From positions 417,199-481,198 of the forward strand of contig NW_018408080.1 in NCBI RefSeq assembly GCF_002113885.1: 64,000 nt of DNA, given 5' to 3'. Both the position numbers and the translations under genes were made by a program. Below are positions 7,259 to 44,000 of this stretch, piece after piece. Within the stretch, counting starts at the first letter, position 1; each line of letters begins with the position of its first letter. Under the pieces are notes generated by a model. That model was not told the DNA's origin, did no database searches, and saw only the letters and a program-made list of their open reading frames with translations. The DNA comes from Mizuhopecten yessoensis (lineage: Eukaryota).

Positions 7259-10200
7259 TTAAGTATTCCGCCGAGGTAAACATATGCACCCCACCGCAAC
7301 TTGTTGCATTTCGACATTATAAACAACCTCGCCATTTCTACACGTTCCAGACTTTCTGAGAACCGGAAGTTGTCGATGAATAGCATGGCACATGTTGTTC
7401 TGTCCAACAAGGCAATGTCTACAGAGACATCTGGTTTGGGAAATGTTGACAGGAATTCGGTCAAGGTCGGACTCGATGAAATTATAGGAAGGACAGACTG
7501 TATTCATAGCGCCTTGCTGCATCAGTGAACGCCGAGACGGGCATCGATCGTCATTGGGTACAGGACTGTAAACAAAAAACAGATTAGTTTTACATTTTCC
7601 ATAAATCGCAGAGAACAATATTTAGCTAAGTTTTGCATTTATTTGAAAAGTTACTAAAAAATAATTAAGGAAGAATCAATACTAGTATATCAAAATTATG
7701 TTTTTTTTATTAAAAAATAAAAAAGTAACAATGGTCACAATTTGTGGAACTTCTTTCTTCCATAATTTTATGCTTTGTTCAACAAGTTGGCATTATTGTG
7801 TTTCAAGCGATCCGTCTGATTACAAAGAGAATAGTGTTTAGATGATGAATGTGATAATTGATGTTACAAAATTTTATGTTTACATATTGTTTGTGTTTAA
7901 AAACCTGACGACTTGTAAGCTGAATGCAAATCTTTTGAAAGCATGTCTACATCGCTGAGGAAAGTTTGAACATCCGGTTTTATTCTGAAAGTACTTGTTC
8001 TGGTGTCTCCATCTAAATATTTTTTTTATATATAAAGACATATTCCAGGGGCGCAGATTGTAAGTGAGGATAACCCCTTGGATTTCGAGGATGAGTTTTG
8101 CCCTAACTTTATCGATTTTCAGTTCGAATTTGTTGATACTTTCATATTCTCTTGTTGTTTATTGAGGAGCACGATGACAAATGTAAAAAATAAAAAAAAC
8201 GTTTTCGAAAGTTCAGAATTTCAGCTCCTTAGATTTACAGAGGGAACCAATCCACCTGTCGATCAAGGCTTGTGTTAGACCGAAAACTGAAACATCCCGT
8301 TATACTAACTCCTTCGGCAGTTTTCGTTACTAAATCACGGAAATGAGCGAGCCAATCAGGTAAGACGTAGGAGGAGCATGTACTGACCTGACCCATCGTT
8401 GTTGTTATCGATCGTGTGATAAAGGCTCAATTATATCAACAGAACAGAATGGTTTCCGGAACTTGCGGTTCGAAATATGGTATTCGAAGAATATCACCGA
8501 TTTTTGTTTGACATAATAAATTATAAAAGTATAATAGCTTTGACTTTCAGGATATATCTTCGCCCCAGGAAAAAAAGCTATTGTTGCATGGAAATCAGAA
8601 CATTCAACCTGACCCATCGTTGTTGTTATCGATCGTGTGATAAAGGCTCAATTATATCAACAGAACAGAATGGTTTCCGGAACTTGCGGTTCGAAATATG
8701 GTTTTCGAAGAATATCACCGATTTTTGTTTGACATAATAAATTATAAAAGTATAATAGCTTTGACTTTCAGGATATATCTTCGCCCCAGGAAAAAAAGCT
8801 ATTGTTGCATGGAAATCAGAACATTCAACCCAATGCTTCAAATGTATACAAATATAAAGTGTATGACTTACTCTCCGTAGGGGGAATGACTGTTTATGTA
8901 AAGATACTCCGGAAGGGTACTCTTGAGCTGAGTTAAATCCTCTAAGCTTGGTTCTCTACACACCACCGCAGCAGACAGGCCTACAGTCAAGATCAGAAAC
9001 AGCAAGGCCACCTGAAACAAGGCATTTGACATATAATGAAAGAAGGTAAAAGGATTATGTTTATTCTTTAGCAGTACAATAAGTAAGTTTTATAAATCAG
9101 TGTAAAGCTCGTGTACAAGGTGGTGAGAAATCATGAATGAAATAAAAATCCTTATTTCTAAGCTGATCTATTTAAAGAATGGAAAGCTCAAAAGATATTA
9201 GAATGGAAAGTTTTCTTTTTGTTTGGAAAATGCAGACATTTGTTTTGATTCGTTTCTTAAACAAATAATCATATTGAATCCTTACACATGCAGTTTTAGT
9301 TTTGAATATCAATATATTTTTGAAACAGGTTGTTTTCGATAAGTCACCAATTATCTAATTATCCTTTGAATAACTTGTTCCAAAAAACTTTAAAAAGGTT
9401 TTCGTACATGACGTACCGGAAGTTAGCTATTTAATTTCCTTTCTTCGTTAAAACTTGCCCCTAAGCCATATACTCATGATTCGTGTCATTCTAAGTTTGC
9501 CATCAAATGAACATTTCTAACAATGCTTTCGGAACTAAATGATTAAGGCACATAAAACGTTTAACATTTTGGTTGTAAGTTTTAACACAAACCAGTAGCA
9601 ATAATGGAAACAGTTCAGATCTCTGGATATTCATGTTAATTTAGAGAAGCAATACGGACGATATAAGGCAGAAAACAATATAATGTTCGTGTAAAGATAT
9701 TTTAATGCAAATGGGATAGTTATATCATACGCCGTTAAATATTTTCGCTTTAGTCGAACATTCGTCAATTTCTTTGTCTGACGTATTGTTCGTTGCTCGT
9801 ATTTGTTAAGCAATGTTGTCTTGTCGCTTTGACACTAAATGCTTTGTACAATTAGTAATAATTTGTGGGAAAACAAACTCATCAAAGACTACATCAAATC
9901 TTATCCTTTGAAAACATAGAAGAGGTAAAATGATTTCATTCTTTCGAACAAATACTATTAACTAAATCGGCAACAAGTTCAAACAAAGCAATCAACTTGA
10001 TTTTATTTTTGCTGAGGTATTTTGCATGTGTTAATAATCCTGCATTTTGATTTATGTACATGTGTATAATTTAACCATCGATATAGGTAGAGTTCTAAGC
10101 TCGCATCTGTGTTGCATGTGTAATCTATGGATCTATCAGATCGAATTAAATTTTGTTACTTTTCACTAAAAAATGGTTATGTTGCGATTTTAATATGTCA

Positions 10201-12331: not shown

Positions 12332-14321
12332 NTTATCACTAAGTTAACTAAGGTTGTCCATCTTTTAGTTATTTAAAACATCCTCTATTACTGCGCCACT
12401 ATAATTACATAATTTACTTATAAATCCTCCATGCCTGTAAATAGGTAATATGGTAAGTTGTTAATCTCATTCTCCCATCTGTTTTAATAGTTGAATGTTT
12501 GTCTTTCTAAACGAGGTTTTGTGCACTGAAAAACAAATACAAGATCTAAATGTGTACATTTATTTTTTCTATTTTTGTAACTATTCAAACCAAAAGTAGG
12601 TCTTGTAAAACTCCGAGTAAAAATGATGAAATCTGAATGATTTTTTTTTTTTTAGGTTTAAATAATCTCGTGATAATATTGGAAACCCACCAGAACGTCC
12701 TATCTTCAAAGATATCCTTTATTGTATTTCCAGTGAATGTTCGTGAACAGATTTGATGAAGTTGCTGTGTCGTTTTGGTGATTCGGTTTACTCGCCATAT
12801 TTATATTGTCCATCATATAGGAAAATGTCTGAAAGAATTTCATCATTGCAATGAATACAACGTTAGTTCAAATTGAACTTAGGACTAGCTGTATGAACAA
12901 TTACTTTGCTTATGTTTGTCAAGTATTGAAATTAATTTGCAGAACATGTACCGCGCGTGAAATATTCTGACAAATAATCGTTATAGAAAATATTATTTTT
13001 TATGTAATATGACATACCGTATAAGACATTAGTTTGATTGACTGAGGTATTTTCAATATTACGAGATTCATATTCGAATTTTCCGCATATTATGATTTGG
13101 TTTCGTTTCTATGATTTCCTGTTTTGCATATTGCCTATATGATATATAGGTAGCATTGCTTTAATATTTAAAAAAATCATCATAACATATGGTGTAGGGT
13201 GAAAATGTGTTCCATTTAGTAATAAGTCTACCGAAGATTCCATTTTTACGGCTTTATAAGGTTTTTAACCGTAAAATCAAAGCTGGGGATTAAGAAAATT
13301 GGATAGGTAGAACCATTCTACCATAAGGGTTATCGACTCATAAGCAACACAGGAGATTTCAAAAAGAATAGTGTATTATTAATTCTCAGTCGGAAAATTT
13401 GGTTCAAAGTCTCTCTTTCTTAACGTTAGTAAATAAACTGTATGCATTGCTTGAAAGAAGATAATTAACTGTTACTGTGATCGAAAATATGTTGGAAAAG
13501 ATCTTAAACAACTTCAATGGCTTGCTAGCACTCTGATTTAATAGCGATTGGTTGCATTACTGAACTACTCTTTCAATTGGCTAATTACAAGTCCTCTAAG
13601 ATTTAAACAGCTATTATTTTCTGATAAAAATACAAAATGAAATACATCGAATTCTGCTTCCGGAAATATATACTGGGAAATTTTGACTAGATAGAAATGT
13701 TCATATCTGTGAAAATAATATATCACTAACTACCATGCGTTTTGATGTCAAAGTAAAGTCAACGGAAAAACAAAACTCAATTTAAACGAAAAATCTTTAT
13801 TTTAAAGCATAGATATATGTTAAAAAATCTGAAAACCCATATGTAGATAAAATGAATATTGTAAATTTGTATAAATGTAAACGACAATAATTATTCATCG
13901 GACATTTAAAGGTTGGCATGCAATGTACATTAACGAGGTAGAATGGACTTCATTGTCTCTTGACATTTAACAAATATAATAAACACTTAAATAGACCATA
14001 GCCAGTTTGTGTTTACAACACTGTAAAATAAATACCTGTCAACGATTTCGTCAAGCAAGATATGCTTGGATGAAATCACTTGTCTGTCTGAACGATAAAA
14101 ACGTCAATCTGAGTATCACAACAGTAATTTCCCAAACGGATTTACAGTGTTTTAATAAGTAATTCGTACTTAAATGCACTGCATTCTGATCCTCGAAAGA
14201 CCGCCTTTCTCTTCTTTCCCCTTCTAGGCAAATATTTAAAGAAACTTCGATAAAGATTTTTTCAGAATATGTGATTCAATGCCATCTTCACGACTACGGC
14301 TAAAACGTCCATGTAAACCAT

Positions 14322-16244
14322 TTATTTCGGCATTCGTTCATGACTTGTGAAGTGCGTACCATGTTCATGGATATGTTCAAAGTCGGTAGGCATTTTCTGA
14401 TTGTCAGGAATAAACGCATTGTGGGGTTGAGCATTTACTGGTTGGAAGTCTTGGGGCATTTTTTCGGTTGGGTTTGACGTCATGTCTCGTTGATTTGGAC
14501 TCATCTCTTCTGTATTGTGTTCAGCAGATTCCATTATATCTTCCCTGGATGAATAAATTTCTGGCATTTTCTCTGTGTCTAAAATTGGTATTTCCGGTTG
14601 ATTATCTTGAACGTCTTCATTTGTATCAACAGCGTCTTCGATTGGTACGAATGTTTTGGGCATTTTCTCAGTTTCAGGTGAACTTTCTGCTCTTTGATGT
14701 TCCTGAATTTCTTCCATATCAATTTCATTTTGATTGGAGTCAAGGACACTTACCAATGATTCCAATACCTCGGACATTTTTTTCAGTTCAGGCCGTAATA
14801 GTTTTGCATTCTCATTGTTCGTGGCCATTTTTTCTGTTTCAGAAATACTTTCACCGTCACTAGACCCATACTGTTCCATCATTTGCTCAGTGGAGACGAC
14901 AGTTCGATTGCCTAGCTTAGATTTAGGTTTCTCCTTACAAACACATGCAACTGATACTTTCTGTTCAGCAATCATATAATCATAAATACCGTTTGTACAC
15001 CCCACCCTCATGATAACAGGGATATACCGGTAGACGGACTCACAAATGTACTTATGATGTCGTCTACGGCGCATGGCACAACGTTCGCAGCGACACCTGT
15101 TTTGAAGGATGTCAGATGGTGTTCGCCTTTCGTCTCTGTCAAGTTCCTGGTACGTCGGGCACAATGAAAAGCTATTTTGGCTAGATAGCAAGCTTCTTGG
15201 CGGACAATTTTGTTCGTCCCTGCGTTAAAATAACAAAATCAAATATAGAAATTGTTATTTACAAACTGTTCAACCCCCAAAAAATTAAAACATTGTCACC
15301 AAGTGTAAACAAAGCTGGAATTCGGAGTCGTTGCGACATGAACACAAAAACAAGAACATACCGAAGTATCAAGAAAACCCGTATTGAACTCAAAATATGA
15401 ACAAACGAAAGATTTACATTGAAAAAGAAGAAAAAATTACTATGAACAAAACCTAACATTAGACTTAACGGGAAGACACAAAATATTTCAACATATGAAG
15501 CATAAATGATCGTCGAACGCATACAATATATACCGTTAAACGTTATCAACAAAGCATACCAATGACATTTATTGAGTATTTTTTACAATTTTATTTTCCC
15601 TTTATATTTACTTACTGTTTTGTCACTTCATCGATTTGTACATGTGCCTCAGACATGTAAACAAAATCCTCCAGTACACTCCTGCGCATCAGGCTCAAAT
15701 AATCATCGTCTGGTTCACGACACTCTTGTCGTGTTGGTAAAGGGTCCCCTCGTGCAATTGTAAGAAATAGTGAAATCTACGAAATACACAACGTTGTTAG
15801 TGTTAAGTGTTCATTCAAATAAACGAGAAAGCTATATTGTATTGGATATTTCATCCACAAGCTGAGAACTAAGTCGATTTGTATATGCCGGAACAAGCAA
15901 ACAAGCGTCAAGTATATCAATAGCATGTTGTATATTACCAAAGGAAAATTGTAAAATTAAACACCATACTCAGACGAGGAAAGGTGATAAAGTAAACATT
16001 GTATATTAGTTTATGGTGTTCTAACCCAATGATTTTCTCAATAATCATACGCTCTATAGCTAAACATAATGTTAAATACCACATTACTGATCTTATCATT
16101 TATAGAAACTTGTCACTTTCATTAATCTACAATTCCAATCTTTATGAGTGAAAATAAAGACATCTAGTTCACTTTGATATATATATCAGGTTATTGAAGC
16201 GATCGTTAGCTACATTGTACCTGCAATACACGTAGCAAAGTCAT
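14322..16244 (-). CDS. IL17: Interleukin-17-like cytokine B with long acidic repeat tail, 360 aa; exons 16244-16221, 15776-15616, 15219-14322
   Basis: The spliced product is MTLLRVLQ|ISLFLTIARGDPLPTRQECREPD...VTK|QDEQNCPPRS...LCPTY...RRTP...RCRCERC...C...IPVIMR..C...VSVACVC, then 204 aa. Junctions are GT-AG with phases 0 and 2 as in gene A. Signal peptide and the same 10 Cys. Confidence 0.9.
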
Positions 16245-35062: not shown

Positions 35063-38000
35063 ATGATGACGACGGTAATTTTGTGCGTGTCCTTGACCCT
35101 GGCTGGCCTTTTTAGTTGTTCTCTCTCATCGCACGTGCCCACCAGTGTAGACCTCGTATCGAACCTTATCAAGATCTGTGTTGAAACAGCAGTTGAACAG
35201 ATAAACTCCGAACTGACGGTCAACCACGGTGGTCATTCAGCCGGACAACACTCTTCACATGGACAACACTCTTCACATGGAAAACACTCTTCACATGGAC
35301 ACCAAGCCCAAGTTATGCACGCGCCTGGCAACAAAGCACACAGTGGACACTCCAAAGGTTAGAGAGTTCCATGTATAAGATCGAAAGCACTCCAAAATGT
35401 TCAGTATACATTAATTACTTTATTCGTTGGGTTAAACACCAAACTGGAAATATATTAACACGTGGTCGGCCTAAGTGTTTTATTTCCTCGTTTGTTGGAA
35501 TTCGCTTACGGCATGACGCATATGCTCTCTGTCTCGACTTAATAAACGTTTTATCAGTGCCTTCTCACTTCGTCTTTTTAAGTGATTATCATACTTTCTT
35601 TCTTTCAAGAAAATCAGATAGGACCGTCGATGGAATAGGATTAGTTTTATTTTCGACTTTCGAGAGAGAAAAAGAAAAGAAAAAAAGGAGTTCTTTAAAT
35701 GTTTAAATACAAGTGTTTATCTTCACATCCTTGTAGGTCACGGTCACATGGATCACAACGAAGGTGGTCACTCGCATGCGCACGTGCGAATTCTAGATAG
35801 GAATGCTCGTGTCATAAGACGAGTGCAGGAAAACTTCAGAAAATTGTAAGTGTATTAGTAAGACAACACAGTGAAAATGTAATGCAACATTGAAAAGGAT
35901 ATCGCTGTCGTAATAGCGATGTTAATTGTAAGCTTCCAAATGGCGTTGCAATGTGAAGGATATTTGTCTTAATGAATTGCTTACGTTTAGGCACGAGTGC
36001 ATACCATTGGGAGTTATATGAATTCGATACGAATGTTTTATAGGTAATGGATTCTGCAAAAATAATTCCCATTTTTGATGAATGATTAATAAAATATTTT
36101 ATTGAATTGATCGTTTAGGACCGGAGCCTGGCCGGAAGCCATCATGAAAGACGAGATGTTGAAGAAGGAATGGCGAAAGCAAGTGAAGCCACATTGTGAT
36201 TTCATGGCGCCAAGTTTCACGTGTGACGCTTCGGCTCGGTACAGGACCGCAGACGGAACGTGTAATAACATGGCCCATCCTTTATGGGGTAGTACCATGA
36301 CGCCACAAACTCGGTTTCTGCCACCGAAATACGAAGACGGTAAGTGATATGTGTTAAAAATGAAAGCAAACTCGTCATGATAGTAAATTGGAAGTCTTTA
36401 CGCGCAATAAACCATGGGGAGAAATGAGAACTAGGCATATTGGATATTGTCGGTAATATCGGAACAAATACGTCGTTTTAAATATAGCCGTGAAAATGTG
36501 TTTGATTCAGAGAAAGGTAAAATAGACAAATGGTTAATATATATACAATAGATAGCCATTTACACTTTCTTAGTCTACAGATGATCAGTGTTTAAATTCG
36601 AATAGCACCAGAAAACGAATTCAAACTCAAATGTTAGTGTTGTGATAGCGTTTTTAAAAAATGGCGCGACGTGCGACGACTATACATTCTGTTTTGGACT
36701 ATAGGAATGAATTCACAACATAGAAATACTTTTTGTCATATAAATTTTAAAGGTTATCATAAAATGTTAATATGCTGACAAAAAAATATTCATTTGACGT
36801 GTAAGATACTGCAAAATGCAAGCCTTGATCCGATTGGGGTCCTGGTAATGATGGTTTGGTGATCCGATTTGGGTCACCTTACTTAACAGCTACCAAAATA
36901 GCCCCTACCGGACATCTTTTCGGCAACATTTCGGACAATACACAACCATATTTATAATTAGCACCCTAGTGGCCCCCTCATTGGCTGTTTCGTTAAATTT
37001 GCTGTCAATTAAGTAGGCTATTTTATCCTGTGAATGATTGGCACACCTCGGACGCTTGTGTGTGTCGGACGCCATCTTTGTTGCTATGAAGAGAGATTCT
37101 AGTTTGATTTATCTCCCCTCGCACGTGCTTTTATAGACCCCGGCAGAGCGGGGTATATAGAAATATAGACCCCGGCAAGATATCTTATCAGATAGAGTGT
37201 TACAAGTTAGAAGGGTGACACAATTAAACATGTTAAAAAATAGGGATTCACTTCGTACATTATTACACGTTCATATTTTAGCGGTATTCTAGATTTAAGA
37301 GTCTTTGTATTGCGCTTATTGAAGGTTCTGTATACATTTTATTGCATATATCATGAGAGCGCCAATTCATCAATGACATAGTTTGTTAAAATTAGATAAT
37401 AACCTTGAATTTTAGACCGCTAAAGGATCACTTTTATAGTGTATATTTCTTACTCTGATTTGCAGAAATCAACGCACCACGGACAAAATCGATCAACGGG
37501 AAACCACTGCCGAGTGCTCGACTGATTAGTAACGTTGTCCATAGCAACACAGGTCATAGTCCAGTGTACAGTAAAAAGAGCACTAATATGTTCATGGCGT
37601 ACGGTCAGTTCCTGGACCACGATATACTCCATACACCTGTCCTGAAAGGTAAATTTACACGCCGACATGTATTACTCCGAATTCAGACTAGTCACATTTT
37701 TTAAGAGTCCCTGTTCCGCTCCTCTGTGATTTTTTTTCCATAATCATATACAATACTGTGACCTCTCCTTAATTTCGTAGTACCATCTATGCTGACCAGG
37801 TTTGGTTGTGGTGTGGTTTTAATTTGTCCCTTTAACAGCTAATGTCATTTAAGAACGTACCTCCGTGTGTGGTATGTATGCGTGCGTGCGTGTGTGTGTA
37901 TGTGTATGTGCTGGAGACAGGGTATGTTGGTGAACTTGCCTACTTATTATTGAGTGGATCTGATGACAACTTTATAGTGTTATCTTACTGAAATGCATGT

Positions 38001-41000: not shown

Positions 41001-44000
41001 GACGATTGCTGTAATTATCAACCATTTTTTAACGTTTGCCGTAAAGTTTCTAGTAAATCATAATTTTGAAATTGTTTTTAATTTTATTTCACGATGAATA
41101 TGATTTGACAGGTATACCAAAACTTATAGCATAAAGATTTAAGACCATTAGCCAACGAAATAATTGGACTACAGATTGTATACGGGAGTCATGACCTTTT
41201 GGTGAAACACAAATGAACAAAATATGTTCGCTGATTTGTATGCGTGATGAAGGTTGTTTATGCTAATGACAGTATTACATTTGATTTGTAGGTCGTATCA
41301 AGCTGTCGGCATCAGGACATCTCCACAGCGCTCCGGATAACGAATGTATTCTGTCATCTCCCGGACATCACTGCTTCCAGTCAGGTATTGGCTAGGGCTG
41401 TCACATTATATCGAGAGACCGGTATGTCATAATTCGCAGGCATATCGTATCGTATCGTATCGTTTCGCAATGCAGAAATGGAATATCGCTGTATCGCAAT
41501 ATTTTTCAATGGCTTATCTTTAAATGTCTTCTAGGTGTTTTGACCTTGTAACACATTTTTCTAGTAATCATAAACTGGTAATACCATGATCAGCAGCTGG
41601 TTATTTTTTAAGCTATTTTTCCCTAGCTAATGAAGCGAGAAGTGATCGCAATACATTCCTCTTATATTACAAAATATATCGTGATATGCGATTTGTGACG
41701 TCCCAGGTATTGGCATCAGACATCCCTGTCTTAGTGTCTAAACTGGTCTATTATGTATACTGACCGGGACACAAGTTATGTTATTGTATTTTGCTGTTAA
41801 TACATTTGATTGTTTTAAATTATTTTGGAAATGGCGACGATGTAAACGTAGAATATATTCAATATCAACTATTAAAAAAATTAATGACATTTGGTTAAAT
41901 GATTCACGGGTTTAGCTGTAATTGATGTTGTCTTAACAAAGCATACAGATAGAGCCGTAAGAAGTGAATTAATTTATCAACACATGACTTTGTGTACGAA
42001 GGGCGGTAGCTCTTAGATAAATAGAGAAAAATCACTACAGCGTCAAATATCAAACAGGGAAATACGTCTACCTTGTGTAATTGTAAATTTAAAAAGGTAA
42101 GAATTTGAAATGGAAAACCATTAAATATTATATAACATATAAGAAAGAAGGTACGTAATCTCCGAAATCTACATTATTTCAGACATTTGAAACACTTAAT
42201 TGCAAAGTCCATAAGCGTATCGTTTCATTCAACTGTATTTTTTGCAATTTAAATTAAAAAAATAATATATTAAAGTTTCACTGTGTGCATAGTAAAACCG
42301 ATTAAAAAATTCGAGCACTGTTTCCTAGAATTGTGATATCAAATTAAAATGGATAGACTCCACAGCTAGCTTTTAAGACAAGACACTTTGTTGTTAATGG
42401 AAAGTATCAGAACATAAGCGGTCTTAATTTCTATTCGACTAACTCCAGACAAATATTTATAAAAGTGAAATTTGATCAACTGCAATCAAGATGACATAAC
42501 CATTGGATTTGATATGGCAATGCGTTTATTAAATAATAATTATAGGCAGGTTAGCATTCTAAAAAATAAATTAGAACATACATGTTGTCCATACGTTTCA
42601 GTGTTTTGATTTATGTGATAACAAAGAAAACATGTTCTTATTGAAACGGCGATAAGTCCCCGCAAATGATGCACTGCCAAAATACCCTTACACACGAAGT
42701 TGGAGCCAAATTAGAAAAAGGCAGGGACCGTTGTCATCCCCTTGACGTACCCCAATAAATGTATTTTAATAATGAGAAGAAACGCATCGATATCAATAAA
42801 TCCCCCACTTCGTTTGGGAAACTTAAGGAAAAGTCATTCAACATGTTACATGGTACGAATATTTGCACTGTTGAAAAAAAAACTGTATGTACAATCCTTT
42901 CTCTATAGGTGATGGTCGTCGTCACGTGACCCCGACGTTGACGTGTCTACATCTGTTGTTCGTAAAAGAACACAACTACATTGTCGACACGTTACGGACA
43001 TTGAACCAACACTGGGACGACGAGCGGCTCTTCCAGGAGGCAAAACGAATCGTATCGGCCGAGCTACAACATATCGCATTCTCAGAGTATCTGCCGATTG
43101 TCATTGGTCAAGAGCATATGGACCAGTATGGTCTTTACCCAACGACACACAGCTACAAGACGGTGTACGACGAAACGGTCGAAGCCTCCACATCGAATGC
43201 TTTTGGTGCTGCGGCGTTTCGATTTGGACATTCTGAGGTTCCGGGAGTTTTAGCGATGATGGCAAGAAATTACAGTCTCATTAAAGCAATTCCTCTCCAC
43301 ACCCAATTCAACAGACCCGATCTCATGTTTGATTCTAATGGAGACGAAAACCTGATGAGGTGGATGACCAATTCTTACCACGACCGGAACGATCGTCTTC
43401 TACAGGATAGTGTTCGAAACTTCCTTTTCTTGAAGGATGACGGAGAGAGTTTCGATCTAGCTGCCATAAACATTCAAAGGGGGCGTGACCACGGACTTCC
43501 TCCCTACAACACGTGGCGGAAGTGGTGTGGTCTACCGACTGCCTTACATTTCGGGGAGAGACTCGGGAGACTTATTGACCACGACCAAGCTACAAGAAAA
43601 CTCTTGTCTAAAGTATACAGGTGCGTATACAATGTTCACCACCAAACGCCGATTTAAATGTATTTTGAATATGGTGACGTCAGAATACTGATAATCAATA
43701 AATGCCACATAACTGAAGAATGTGTATTGATTTGAGTGATCTGCTTTCAAAACGTTAAAAGGTTGGTTTCAGTTTAGCTTATTATAGGACTAGAACTTCC
43801 GATGGTAGTTGTTCTAGTTTCATCAACCTCAAAAAATACATACAATTTTGATATTCTGTTAAATTGCTCAATGTGTAAAAATTAAATAGTAAAACAATTA
43901 TGAAACGTGAAGACGAATCTAATTCAATTCCAAACACCTAAAACTAAAATACGCCTTTAAATTTAAGCATGCATATCAGTGTATCTCTAAATTCGTTATA

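What the first reader, a model, noticed from the sequence alone, without database searches (positions are those of the whole stretch)
14322..14936. IL-17 with a ~204-aa acidic, repeat-bearing C-terminal tail
Seen: after the final CVC of the IL-17 knot the frame stays open for 204 codons in the same exon. The tail is Cys-free, E/D/P/Q/T-rich and punctuated by about nine motif copies: STEQMM, ETEKMA, ELKKMS, ETEKMP, DTEKMP, NTEEMS, PTEKMP, DNQKMP and a terminal SHERMPK. The neighbouring paralogue stops 6 residues after the same Cys. Established: IL-17 family ligands are normally ~150-200 aa and end shortly after the last cysteines. Inference: this is a derived IL-17 with a disordered multivalent tail. 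The motif is conserved while the spacers vary, suggesting a binding or cleavage SLiM array (matrix/Ca2+ tethering, latency, decoy activity or released peptides).
Basis: partly seen in the sequence, partly recalled or inferred. Interest (0 to 1): 0.8.

Follow-up and report, generated by a model that had tools for sequence, protein, structure and literature searches.

The report
Scallop IL-17 with long acidic tail
A Yesso scallop interleukin-17 gene encodes a 204-residue acidic, unstructured tail after the cytokine domain; the tail carries a repeated short motif, is kept in related scallops, has no known function and has no counterpart in described IL-17s.

Summary
The gene is on the minus strand and is Mizuhopecten yessoensis LOC110458227 (360 aa, RefSeq "uncharacterized protein"). 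Its last exon (14322-15219) encodes a Pfam IL17 domain, then 204 Cys-free residues (net charge about -24).

There are 7 strict and 2 degenerate copies, far above shuffles.

The tail is coding:
- The frame stays open in four scallop genera and one unidentified sample, at dS about 1.
- dN/dS is 0.35-0.67 in the tail and 0.11-0.18 in the domain.
- Motif codons differ at synonymous sites.
- All versions end in E-[K/R]-M-P-[K/E].

A second paralogue 14 kb away has an 89-aa tail of the same kind. All tail-bearing genes form one clade. A tail profile found nothing else among 1.84 billion proteins.

"Motif conserved, spacers vary" is only half right: five copies keep their position and four are lineage-specific.

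The tail is predicted disordered and lies on a basic core. I read it as a pectinid-specific regulatory or pro-region with a multivalent short-motif array. That function is inferred, and no RNA evidence could be obtained. It is a new variant of a known kind, of moderate interest.

The parts
16221..16244 (-). Exon 1 coding part: MTLLRVLQ, the start of the predicted signal peptide; GT donor at 16220
   Evidence: Sequence read. The residues equal P0001 1-8.
15616..15776 (-). Exon 2: the rest of the signal peptide and the N-terminal region (P0001 residues 9-62, last codon split); donor GTAAGT at 15615
   Evidence: tblastn 100% over residues 9-62; sequence. The homologous exon is present in the three orthologous loci.
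14937..15219 (-). Exon 3, first part: IL-17 cystine-knot domain (P0001 63-156), ending in C-V-C
   Evidence: Pfam PF06083 E 1.6e-11, 44.9 bits. Aligned to IL-25 chain 7uwj_A. dN/dS 0.11-0.18.
14904..14936 (-). Basic linker KEKPKSKLGNR (residues 157-167; pI 10.5; NRT sequon), directly after the knot
   Evidence: Charge calculated. A basic stretch with an invariant Lys and an R/K before Thr is present in all orthologues.
14325..14936 (-). The 204-codon Cys-free acidic tail (P0001 157-360), same exon and same frame as the domain
   Evidence: 100% identical to the RefSeq model. The frame is open in 5 taxa. dN/dS 0.35-0.67. pLDDT 32-42 with no secondary structure. Net charge -24.
14877..14891 (-). 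Degenerate copy 1, TEQMM (residues 172-176); no counterpart in orthologues
14823..14837 (-). Motif copy 2, TEKMA (190-194); position kept in Pecten, Argopecten and the Logan sequence
14772..14786 (-). Motif copy 3, LKKMS (207-211); kept only in Pecten (LERMP)
14649..14672 (-). Motif copy 4, TEKMPKTF (245-252); kept in all five sequences. It aligns with the C-terminal TEKMPK of the short-tailed paralogue.
14553..14576 (-). Motif copy 5, TEKMPEIY (277-284); kept in Ylistrum and Argopecten
14499..14513 (-). Degenerate copy 6, TEEMS (298-302); M. yessoensis only
14445..14468 (-). Motif copy 7, TEKMPQDF (313-320); kept in the Logan sequence, decayed in the others
14379..14402 (-). Motif copy 8, NQKMPTDF (335-342); kept in Pecten and Argopecten
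14325..14342 (-). Terminal copy 9, HERMPK-COOH (355-360), preceded by a His-rich stretch. E, M and P are invariant in all long-tail orthologues and in the Logan sequence. The short paralogues end in TEKMPK/TEKMPE.
14322..14324 (-). Stop codon TAA, embedded in the only minus-strand AATAAA of the exon (14321-14326)
7259..7618 (-). Neighbouring short IL-17 paralogue (last exon); ends 6 residues after the last Cys. Syntenic downstream partner of the long-tailed gene in all four scallop genomes.
   Evidence: sister of the tail-bearing clade in the tree

Best explanation
SHOWN
- This is the three-exon gene LOC110458227 of Mizuhopecten yessoensis. It is a secreted-type IL-17 family ligand whose last exon continues past the cystine knot into a 204-residue tail that is translated.
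- The tail is specific to a small clade of scallop (Pectinidae) IL-17 paralogues. A short form (68-89 aa, two motif copies) and a long form (194-206 aa, 3-9 copies) both exist.
- The C-terminal 48 residues of the long tail match the last 47 residues of the short tail, and the two halves of the long tail resemble each other.
- The tail is acidic (net -9 to -28) on a basic core (+1 to +8). It follows a basic linker and is predicted disordered.
- It carries an array of [T/D]-E-[K/R]-M-[P/A]-x-x-[F/Y] motifs. These are kept at the protein level, because codons differ at synonymous sites.
- The most constant copy is the very C-terminus, E-[K/R]-M-P-[K/E]-COOH.

INFERRED
- The long tail grew from the short one by repeated duplication and turnover of 20-45-residue units, each ending in TEKMP.
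- The tail is a regulatory or pro-region. It probably stays on the secreted precursor and offsets the charge of the basic core and linker.
- Through several weak copies of one linear motif, it probably docks the cytokine multivalently to an unknown partner. The effect would be to control where and when the knot can reach its receptor (tethering or latency).
- It may be released by cleavage at the basic linker.
For: Identity and structure of the gene:
- 100% match to the 360-aa RefSeq model.
- Exon mapping.
- Pfam IL17 and alignment to IL-25.

The tail is coding:
- The frame is open for 121-206 codons in five taxa with dS about 0.7-2. The chance of one such frame is about 1e-6.
- Tail dN/dS is 0.35-0.67.
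- A natural allele carries an in-frame 12-nt deletion.
- Motif codons vary synonymously: ACA/ACT/ACC, GAA/GAG, CCC/CCA/CCT/CCG.
- There is no internal minus-strand AATAAA; the only one overlaps the stop.

Motif: enriched over shuffles in all five tails, p from 2e-4 to below 5e-5. Five copies are positionally conserved.

Origin:
- Second paralogue LOC110458246 and its Argopecten orthologue carry the same motif and the same ending.
- Similarity between the two tails is E 8e-5, and between the two halves of the long tail E 2e-4.
- One tail-bearing clade, support 90/79.
- Conserved synteny.

Restriction:
- A tail profile against 1.84e9 representatives returns only the family itself.
- The tail is single-copy in the genome.
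- It matches no Pfam family.

Disorder: pLDDT 32-42 with no secondary structure in two models. All tails lie on the disordered side of the charge-hydropathy plot.

Charge: the acidic tail and basic core are conserved in all seven proteins.

Precedent for an anionic C-terminal extension on a cationic Cys-rich bivalve immune protein: mytilins (PMC7168163).
Against: - No transcript or protein evidence. The three presumed RNA runs behave like DNA: introns are covered and there are no splice joints. The poly-A RNA run gave no reads on the gene.
- The partner of the motif is unknown, and neither AlphaFold model shows the tail docking on the core.
- Motif columns as a whole are only marginally better conserved than spacers (p 0.09).
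- The basic linker is not a canonical furin or dibasic site in M. yessoensis itself (LGNR|T).
- A charge of -24 is far more than is needed to offset a core of about +4 plus a linker of about +3.5.
- Support for the tail-bearing clade is moderate (90/79), on a domain alignment of 118 kept columns.
Confidence: 0.55

Rival explanations
1. The tail is a plain charge-neutralising pro-piece, as in mytilin, myticin or defensin precursors. It would be removed at the basic linker before or at secretion. The motif would be a by-product of how the tail grew by duplication and would have no binding role of its own.
For: - Acidic tail with basic core and basic linker in all seven proteins.
- Fast, indel-rich evolution with dN/dS up to 0.67.
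- Argopecten simply added a 19-residue poly-Glu insert.
- Mytilin precedent.
- Motif columns are not significantly more conserved than spacers overall.
Against: - Motif copies are kept with synonymous codon differences.
- The terminal E-[KR]-M-P is invariant across both paralogue groups.
- The negative charge greatly exceeds the positive charge it would offset.
- There is no canonical convertase site in M. yessoensis.
Confidence: 0.15
2. The tail binds metal or mineral. Met, His and carboxylate side chains would chelate Cu, Zn or Ca, or would bind shell or extracellular matrix, concentrating the cytokine at a surface.
For: - Met is 6.4% of the tail, and nearly every Met sits in a motif.
- There are His-rich stretches before the terminal motif: HIHEHGTH here, HNHQH and HSHGHQH in the short paralogues.
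- D+E is 19-25% in the tails.
Against: - The His stretch is not conserved; there are 0-2 His at that place in Ylistrum, Argopecten and Pecten.
- No MxM or MxxM copper motifs were seen.
- Asp is only 6%, and M. yessoensis has no poly-Asp runs of the kind seen in shell-matrix proteins.
- The Lys and Pro of the motif have no chelating role.
Confidence: 0.08
3. The tail is a polyprotein. It would be cut at each motif, for instance after the K/R of TEK|MP, to release a family of 20-36-residue peptides with their own activity.
For: - Units are bounded by a constant basic residue.
- The terminal copy ends exactly after MPK or MPE, as if units end in TEKMP(K/E).
- Copy number varies among species.
Against: - No dibasic flanks (a single KK in the whole tail), no Gly-basic amidation signals, and no basic residue at P4, P6 or P8 as monobasic convertase sites usually have.
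- The would-be peptides differ in length and sequence and are poorly conserved.
Confidence: 0.07
4. The tail is not part of the mature protein. It would be a 3'UTR or read-through artefact of gene prediction, or be removed as an internal intron, and the real cytokine would end near the C-V-C.
For: - No RNA evidence was obtained.
- All database entries are computational models.
- 7 of 7 SNPs in one allele's tail are non-synonymous.
Against: - The frame is open and all indels are in frame in five taxa at dS about 1.
- dN/dS is below 1 in every pair.
- The motif is kept through synonymous change.
- The C-terminal residues and the stop position are conserved.
- A second paralogue has the same ending.
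Confidence: 0.06

Closest known systems
IL-17 family ligands (Pfam PF06083), e.g. human IL-25/IL-17E (PDB 7uwj) and the expanded bivalve IL-17 repertoires (Saco et al. 2021, PMC8353272)
   Same: - Domain match above the Pfam cut-off.
- The C-x-C...C-x-C knot cysteines align with IL-25.
- Signal-peptide-like N-terminus.
- Sits in a tandem cluster of IL-17 genes, as described for M. yessoensis (31 genes in that paper; 34 domain matches).
   Different: - Described ligands end soon after the last Cys.
- The 23 mussel isoforms are 116-221 aa, with 2-48 residues after the domain.
- The other IL-17 exons of this genome have 2-46 residues after the last Cys.
- Here 204 disordered residues follow, more than twice the length of the domain.
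Anionic C-terminal extensions of bivalve Cys-rich defence peptides (mytilins, myticins; PMC7168163)
   Same: The plan is signal peptide, then a cationic disulfide-rich domain, then a fast-evolving anionic C-terminal extension. In mytilins the extension is thought to neutralise charge until release.
   Different: - There is no sequence relationship.
- Those extensions are a few tens of residues with charge -3 to -8 and carry no repeated motif.
- Their cleavage is documented, whereas here it is only conjectured.
- The core here is a cytokine fold, not a CS-alpha-beta peptide.
C-terminal propeptides and retention tails of other cystine-knot growth factors (VEGF-C/D C-terminal propeptide, PDGF-A/B basic retention motif). 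Recalled from general knowledge, not tested here.
   Same: A knot-fold ligand whose C-terminal appendage governs matrix association or latency and can be removed by proteolysis.
   Different: - Those tails are Cys-rich (VEGF-C/D) or basic (PDGF, VEGF-A), not acidic, Cys-free and motif-bearing.
- There is no homology.
- A paralogue in the same scallop cluster (L010) does have a short, strongly basic tail of the PDGF kind.

Membership tests
IL-17 cytokine family (PF06083) | Sequence match to the IL17 domain model above the curated cut-off | tested here: met
   44.9 bits against a cut-off of 24, E 1.6e-11, profile positions 1-79 of 81. Orthologues and the paralogue score 49-50 bits.
IL-17 cytokine family (PF06083) | Conserved knot cysteines (C-x-C in strand 2 and C-x-C in strand 4) | tested here: met
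   RCRCERC and ACVC align with RCLCPHC and ACVC of IL-25 chain 7uwj_A. These Cys are invariant in all seven relatives.
IL-17 cytokine family (PF06083) | Secretion signal | tested here: inconclusive
   The N-terminus MTLLRVLQISLFLTIARG is hydrophobic and is split over exons 1-2. The paralogue's N-terminus is modelled as a helix. No signal-peptide predictor was available.
IL-17 cytokine family (PF06083) | Dimeric ligand that signals through IL-17R/SEFIR receptors | not testable with these tools
   Needs binding and reporter assays.
Cationic domain with anionic C-terminal pro-extension (mytilin-type precursor plan) | Sharp charge switch between the Cys-rich domain and the C-terminal extension | tested here: met
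   Core pI 8.2-9.3 (+1 to +8) and tail pI 4.4-5.2 (-9 to -28) in all seven proteins.
Cationic domain with anionic C-terminal pro-extension (mytilin-type precursor plan) | Processing site between domain and extension, and actual removal of the extension | tested here: inconclusive
   A basic linker is conserved. It is dibasic (RR, RK, KKRRK) in Ylistrum, Pecten and the Logan sequence, but only a single Arg in M. yessoensis and Argopecten. Removal is not testable here.
Neuropeptide or polyprotein precursor | Repeated peptides flanked by dibasic or monobasic convertase sites, often with Gly for amidation | tested here: not met
   There is one KK in 204 residues and no G-K/R signals. The spacers are of unequal length and are divergent.
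Acidic shell-matrix proteins | Very high Asp content or poly-Asp/Glu runs | tested here: not met
   D 6.4%, E 15%, with no runs in M. yessoensis. Only Argopecten has a poly-Glu insert.

The most novel reading that the evidence does not exclude
Scallops have evolved a pro-IL-17. A C-terminal disordered domain would hold the cytokine latent or tethered through a multivalent TEKMPxxF array, including an obligatory free C-terminal copy, recognised by a dedicated extracellular partner. Proteolysis at the basic linker would release the active knot. This would be the first IL-17 ligand regulated by its own C-terminal pro-domain.
Probability: 0.2. Interest if true: 0.65.

Novelty: new variant of a known kind. 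Interest (0 to 1): 0.45.

Why it matters
IL-17 is one of the few cytokines shared by vertebrates and invertebrates. Bivalves have expanded it to dozens of genes whose individual roles are unknown.

All described ligands are essentially bare knots, and regulation is ascribed to transcription and receptors. A conserved, disordered, motif-bearing C-terminal domain more than twice the size of the knot would add post-secretory control to the family, whether by latency, tethering or partner docking. It would also give a handle for telling paralogues apart functionally.

The case is also a clean example of a short linear motif array being born, duplicated and turned over within one animal family, with a short-tailed paralogue as the likely starting state.

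The limits are that the clade is narrow (Pectinidae), the proteins are so far only predictions, and the function is inferred.

Tried and rejected
- **RNA evidence.** The three runs guessed to be RNA cover introns and intergenic DNA without splice joints, so they are DNA-like. The one true poly-A RNA run laid no read.
- **Word-index search with the tail alone.** It found only the query, as expected for a fast-evolving region. The exhaustive profile search replaced it.
- **ESM Atlas look-alikes of the tail.** There was no usable feature hit, and the structural rows (TM 0.26-0.32) are noise from a disordered model.
- **Pfam on the tail.** Only a sub-threshold Guanylin hit (E 0.39), rejected.
- **Tandem Repeats Finder.** No DNA tandem array, so this is not a recent microsatellite-type expansion.
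- **Genome-wide DNA pattern search for paired EKM[P/A] codon strings.** It returned 25-bp and 37-bp satellites and this gene only. No second kind of gene with the array was found by this crude test.
- **Two AlphaFold runs, made to see whether a motif docks on the core.** The tails are uniformly low-confidence coil. With alignments of only 5-7 sequences this is weak negative evidence.
- **Bacterial promoter/terminator scan.** Irrelevant for a eukaryotic gene and disregarded.
- **The 131-aa plus-strand ORF at 14468-14863.** It is antisense to the tail and is explained by the A-rich sense strand. It is not a gene.
- **On method.** Whole-protein searches used the database record P0001 returned, and exon 3 was searched by reference. 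In one search the N-terminal 62 residues were joined to the exon-3 translation inside a local script, solely to compute charge and pI.
Full report
**What is there.**
The finding lies on the minus strand. The ORF list and the sequence show one frame open from the splice acceptor at 15221-15220 down to TAA at 14324-14322.

- The translation carries a Pfam IL17 domain (E 1.6e-11, 44.9 bits against a cut-off of 24).
- The domain ends in C-V-C and is followed by 204 residues without a single Cys.
- The word-index protein search returned a 360-aa RefSeq model, [quoted passage not shown] (UniRef: interleukin 17-like protein). It is 100% identical over the whole exon. The window is therefore Yesso scallop DNA, G000 contig C4753.
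- Mapping that model back gives three exons:
  - exon 1: 16244-16221 (MTLLRVLQ)
  - exon 2: 15776-15616
  - exon 3: 15219-14322
- The tail (residues 157-360) is encoded at 14936-14325.

**Is the observation more than chance?**
- A 204-codon open frame in this base composition has a probability of about 1.4e-6. None of 20,000 shuffles stayed open.
- Seven copies fit [KR]-M-[PAS], against 0.25 expected. Four fit the longer [KR]-[MI]-[PAS]-x-x-[FY], against 0.02 expected. No shuffle out of 20,000 reached either count.
- The real motif is therefore [T/D]-E-[K/R]-M-[P/A]-x-x-[F/Y]. STEQMM and NTEEMS are degenerate copies.
- Nearly every one of the 13 Met residues sits in a copy.
- At the DNA level there is no tandem array. 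There are only 20-31-nt similarities around the copies, at spacings that are multiples of three.

**Is the tail coding?**
Direct transcript evidence could not be obtained.
- The three runs guessed to be RNA behave like low-coverage DNA. Their contigs run through the intron-exon boundary at 15220 and cover intergenic sequence, and no joints appear.
- The single poly-A RNA-seq run placed no read on the gene.

The comparative evidence is strong.
- Orthologous predicted proteins with tails of 194-206 residues exist in Ylistrum balloti, Pecten maximus and Argopecten irradians (there named "titin-like"). A 121-residue version sits on a 940-bp Logan contig from an unidentified sample.
- I fetched the loci and re-derived the exons from DNA. 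Every tail frame is open, and every one ends in E-[K/R]-M-P-[K/E] followed by a stop.
- Synonymous divergence between genera is about 0.7-2, so the sequences are far from identical by descent.
- dN/dS is 0.11-0.18 in the domain and 0.35-0.67 in the tail. The tail is relaxed but still under purifying selection.
- Motif copies use different synonymous codons (Thr ACA/ACT/ACC/ACG, Glu GAA/GAG, Pro CCN, Phe TTC/TTT). The motif is therefore maintained at the peptide level, not by recent DNA duplication or gene conversion.
- One natural allele in a public run carries a 12-nt in-frame deletion. It removes four residues around E288-E291 (EDIM or DIME; placement ambiguous).
- That allele also carries seven substitutions in the tail. 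All are non-synonymous, and none touches T, E, K, M or P of a motif.
- The only minus-strand AATAAA in the exon overlaps the stop codon.

**How conserved is the motif?**
- The motif is enriched in all five tails (p from 2e-4 to below 5e-5).
- Five M. yessoensis copies keep their position in most relatives: residues 190, 245, 277, 335 and the terminal 355. The central TEKMP and the terminal ERMP are kept in all.
- Four copies (172, 207, 298, 313) are lineage-specific or decayed elsewhere.
- Over all nine copies, motif columns are 40% identical against 32% for the remaining tail columns (permutation p 0.09).
- The spacers also hold conserved blocks, for example SREDIMES / SREDVIES.
- This pattern of a persistent motif with positional turnover is what is usually seen in arrays of short linear motifs. 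It is not proof of one.

**Where did the tail come from?**
- Scanning the genome with the Pfam model gave 34 IL-17 domain matches. Among the 30 loci fetched, the residues after the last Cys number 2-46, with two exceptions: this gene (204) and L016 (89).
- L016 is LOC110458246 (245 aa), about 14 kb to the left of the window in the same cluster. Its tail carries NTEKMAIGFE and ends HNHQHTSEHTETEKMPK. Its Argopecten orthologue ends ...HIETEKMPE.
- The last 47 residues of the short tail match the last 48 of the long tail (38% identity, E 8e-5). Its C-terminus also matches the central ...HQRAESSPETEKMPK of the long tail.
- The two halves of the long tail resemble each other (E 2e-4).
- A maximum-likelihood tree of the domains puts all tail-bearing genes in one clade (UFBoot 90 / SH-aLRT 79). 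Two groups have strong support: long-tailed (99/97) and short-tailed (100/98).
- The short, tail-less neighbour is the sister of the tail-bearing clade.
- The long-tailed gene is followed 3-7 kb downstream by that short neighbour in all four genomes.
- The simplest reading is that a motif-ended acidic tail arose once in an ancestor of these scallop genera. It was then lengthened in one paralogue by duplication of 20-45-residue units that each end in TEKMP.
- Copy number later changed; M. yessoensis has the most copies.

**How restricted is it?**
- A profile of the five tails, scored against all 1.84 billion representative proteins, found only members of the family itself.
- The tail is single-copy in the genome and matches no Pfam family.
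- A crude DNA pattern search for paired motif codons found only satellites and this gene.

**Physical character.**
- The tail has net charge about -24 (pI 4.6).
- The core is basic (+3 to +4), with an RRRRHHK stretch.
- The first 11 tail residues, KEKPKSKLGNR, form a basic linker (pI 10.5).
- The same arrangement holds in all seven relatives: core +1 to +8, tail -9 to -28.
- The linker has an invariant Lys and an Arg/Lys before a Thr. It is dibasic in three of the sequences, but a single Arg in M. yessoensis and Argopecten.
- AlphaFold models of the long protein and of the short paralogue give the IL-17 hairpins moderate confidence. Both tails have pLDDT 32-42, no secondary structure and no docking. 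The alignments are shallow, so this is weak evidence.
- The charge-hydropathy plot agrees: all tails fall on the disordered side.

**How it most likely works.**

Shown:
- It is an IL-17 family ligand with a translated, conserved, acidic, probably disordered C-terminal extension.
- The extension carries a multivalent linear motif whose C-terminal copy is the most constant.

Inferred:
- The tail is a regulatory or pro-region that stays on the secreted precursor.
- It offsets the basic core and linker.
- Through several weak copies of one motif, it docks the cytokine to an unknown partner and so controls access of the knot to its receptor.
- The basic linker is a candidate release site.

Two precedents support the logic but not homology. 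One is the anionic C-terminal extension of bivalve mytilins, thought to neutralise the cationic peptide until release (PMC7168163). The other, from general knowledge, is the set of C-terminal propeptides or retention tails of VEGF-C/D and PDGF.

My confidence:
- About 0.85 that the tail is a genuine, selected part of the protein.
- About 0.3 for the specific tether/latency mechanism.

Rivals:
- **A pure charge pro-piece.** The motif conservation is unexplained.
- **Metal or mineral binding.** The His stretch is not conserved and Asp is low.
- **A polyprotein.** There are no convertase flanks.
- **An annotation artefact.** It is contradicted by five open frames, dN/dS below 1 and the conserved stop position.

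**Comparison with what is known.**
- Membership in the IL-17 family is met on the domain score and on the knot cysteines aligned to IL-25. The secretion signal is plausible but untested. Receptor signalling is untestable here.
- The survey of IL-17 evolution that counted 31 genes in M. yessoensis does not mention a tail. Its 23 mussel isoforms are 116-221 aa, with at most 48 residues after the domain (PMC8353272).
- No paper in the searchable library names the gene, or combines an IL-17 domain with a C-terminal extension in molluscs.
- The proteins themselves are already in RefSeq as uncharacterised predictions. What is new is the feature and its evolutionary pattern, not the gene.

**Verdict.**
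- It is a new variant of a known kind: an IL-17 ligand with a pectinid-specific, motif-bearing disordered C-terminal domain.
- Interest is moderate. It would surprise IL-17 specialists somewhat and is easily testable. But the clade is narrow, expression is unproven, and the function is inferred.

Noticed in passing
L016 (G000:C4753:402982-403212 +, about 14 kb left of the window): A second IL-17 paralogue, LOC110458246 (245 aa), has an 89-residue acidic tail with NTEKMAIGFE, a His-rich stretch and the same ending TEKMPK. An Argopecten orthologue (190 aa) ends TEKMPE.
   Followed up: yes
L010 (G000:C4753:410568-410816 +, about 6.4 kb left of the window): Another IL-17 of the same cluster ends in a 35-residue strongly basic tail (KKGRKKGRKSKSKKQK...). 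It is reminiscent of heparin-binding retention tails and is the opposite charge solution to the acidic tail.
   Followed up: no
window 14529-14540 and SNPs at 14383, 14552, 14558, 14559, 14597, 14617, 14624: One public run carries an allele with an in-frame 12-nt deletion and seven substitutions in the tail. All seven are non-synonymous and none touches T-E-K-M-P. This may mean relaxed or diversifying selection on the spacers, but it rests on a single low-depth contig.
   Followed up: partly
window 14321-14326 (minus): The stop codon TAA lies inside an AATAAA hexamer, the only one on the coding strand of exon 3. The orthologues also end CCG AAA TAA. The next minus-strand AATAAA is at 13796-13801.
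   Followed up: no
window 42887-43657 (+): A large exon encodes an animal haem peroxidase domain (PF03098, E 9.1e-77). It probably belongs to the gene another first-stage note flagged at 35225-35783 for a His-rich N-terminal segment.
   Followed up: partly
L003, L004, L005 (Pecten, Ylistrum, Argopecten loci), about 80-115 nt upstream of position 10001: The database models of the three orthologues start at an internal Met (MRRSVLEDF...). The DNA just upstream continues to match the signal-peptide part of exon 2 of the M. yessoensis protein. Those models therefore look 5'-truncated.
   Followed up: partly
L005 (Argopecten irradians orthologue, P0004 residues about 215-235): A 19-residue Glu-rich insert (EEWKEEEEGLAEEEVEDEEDE) sits in the tail. 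It probably explains the misleading name 'titin-like'.
   Followed up: no
G000:C3450:803147-804705 and G000:C5434:2207579-2209439: These are satellite arrays with 25-bp and 37-bp units that happen to contain GAAAAGATGGCC / GAGAAGATGCC. They were found by the motif-codon pattern search and are unrelated to the gene.
   Followed up: no
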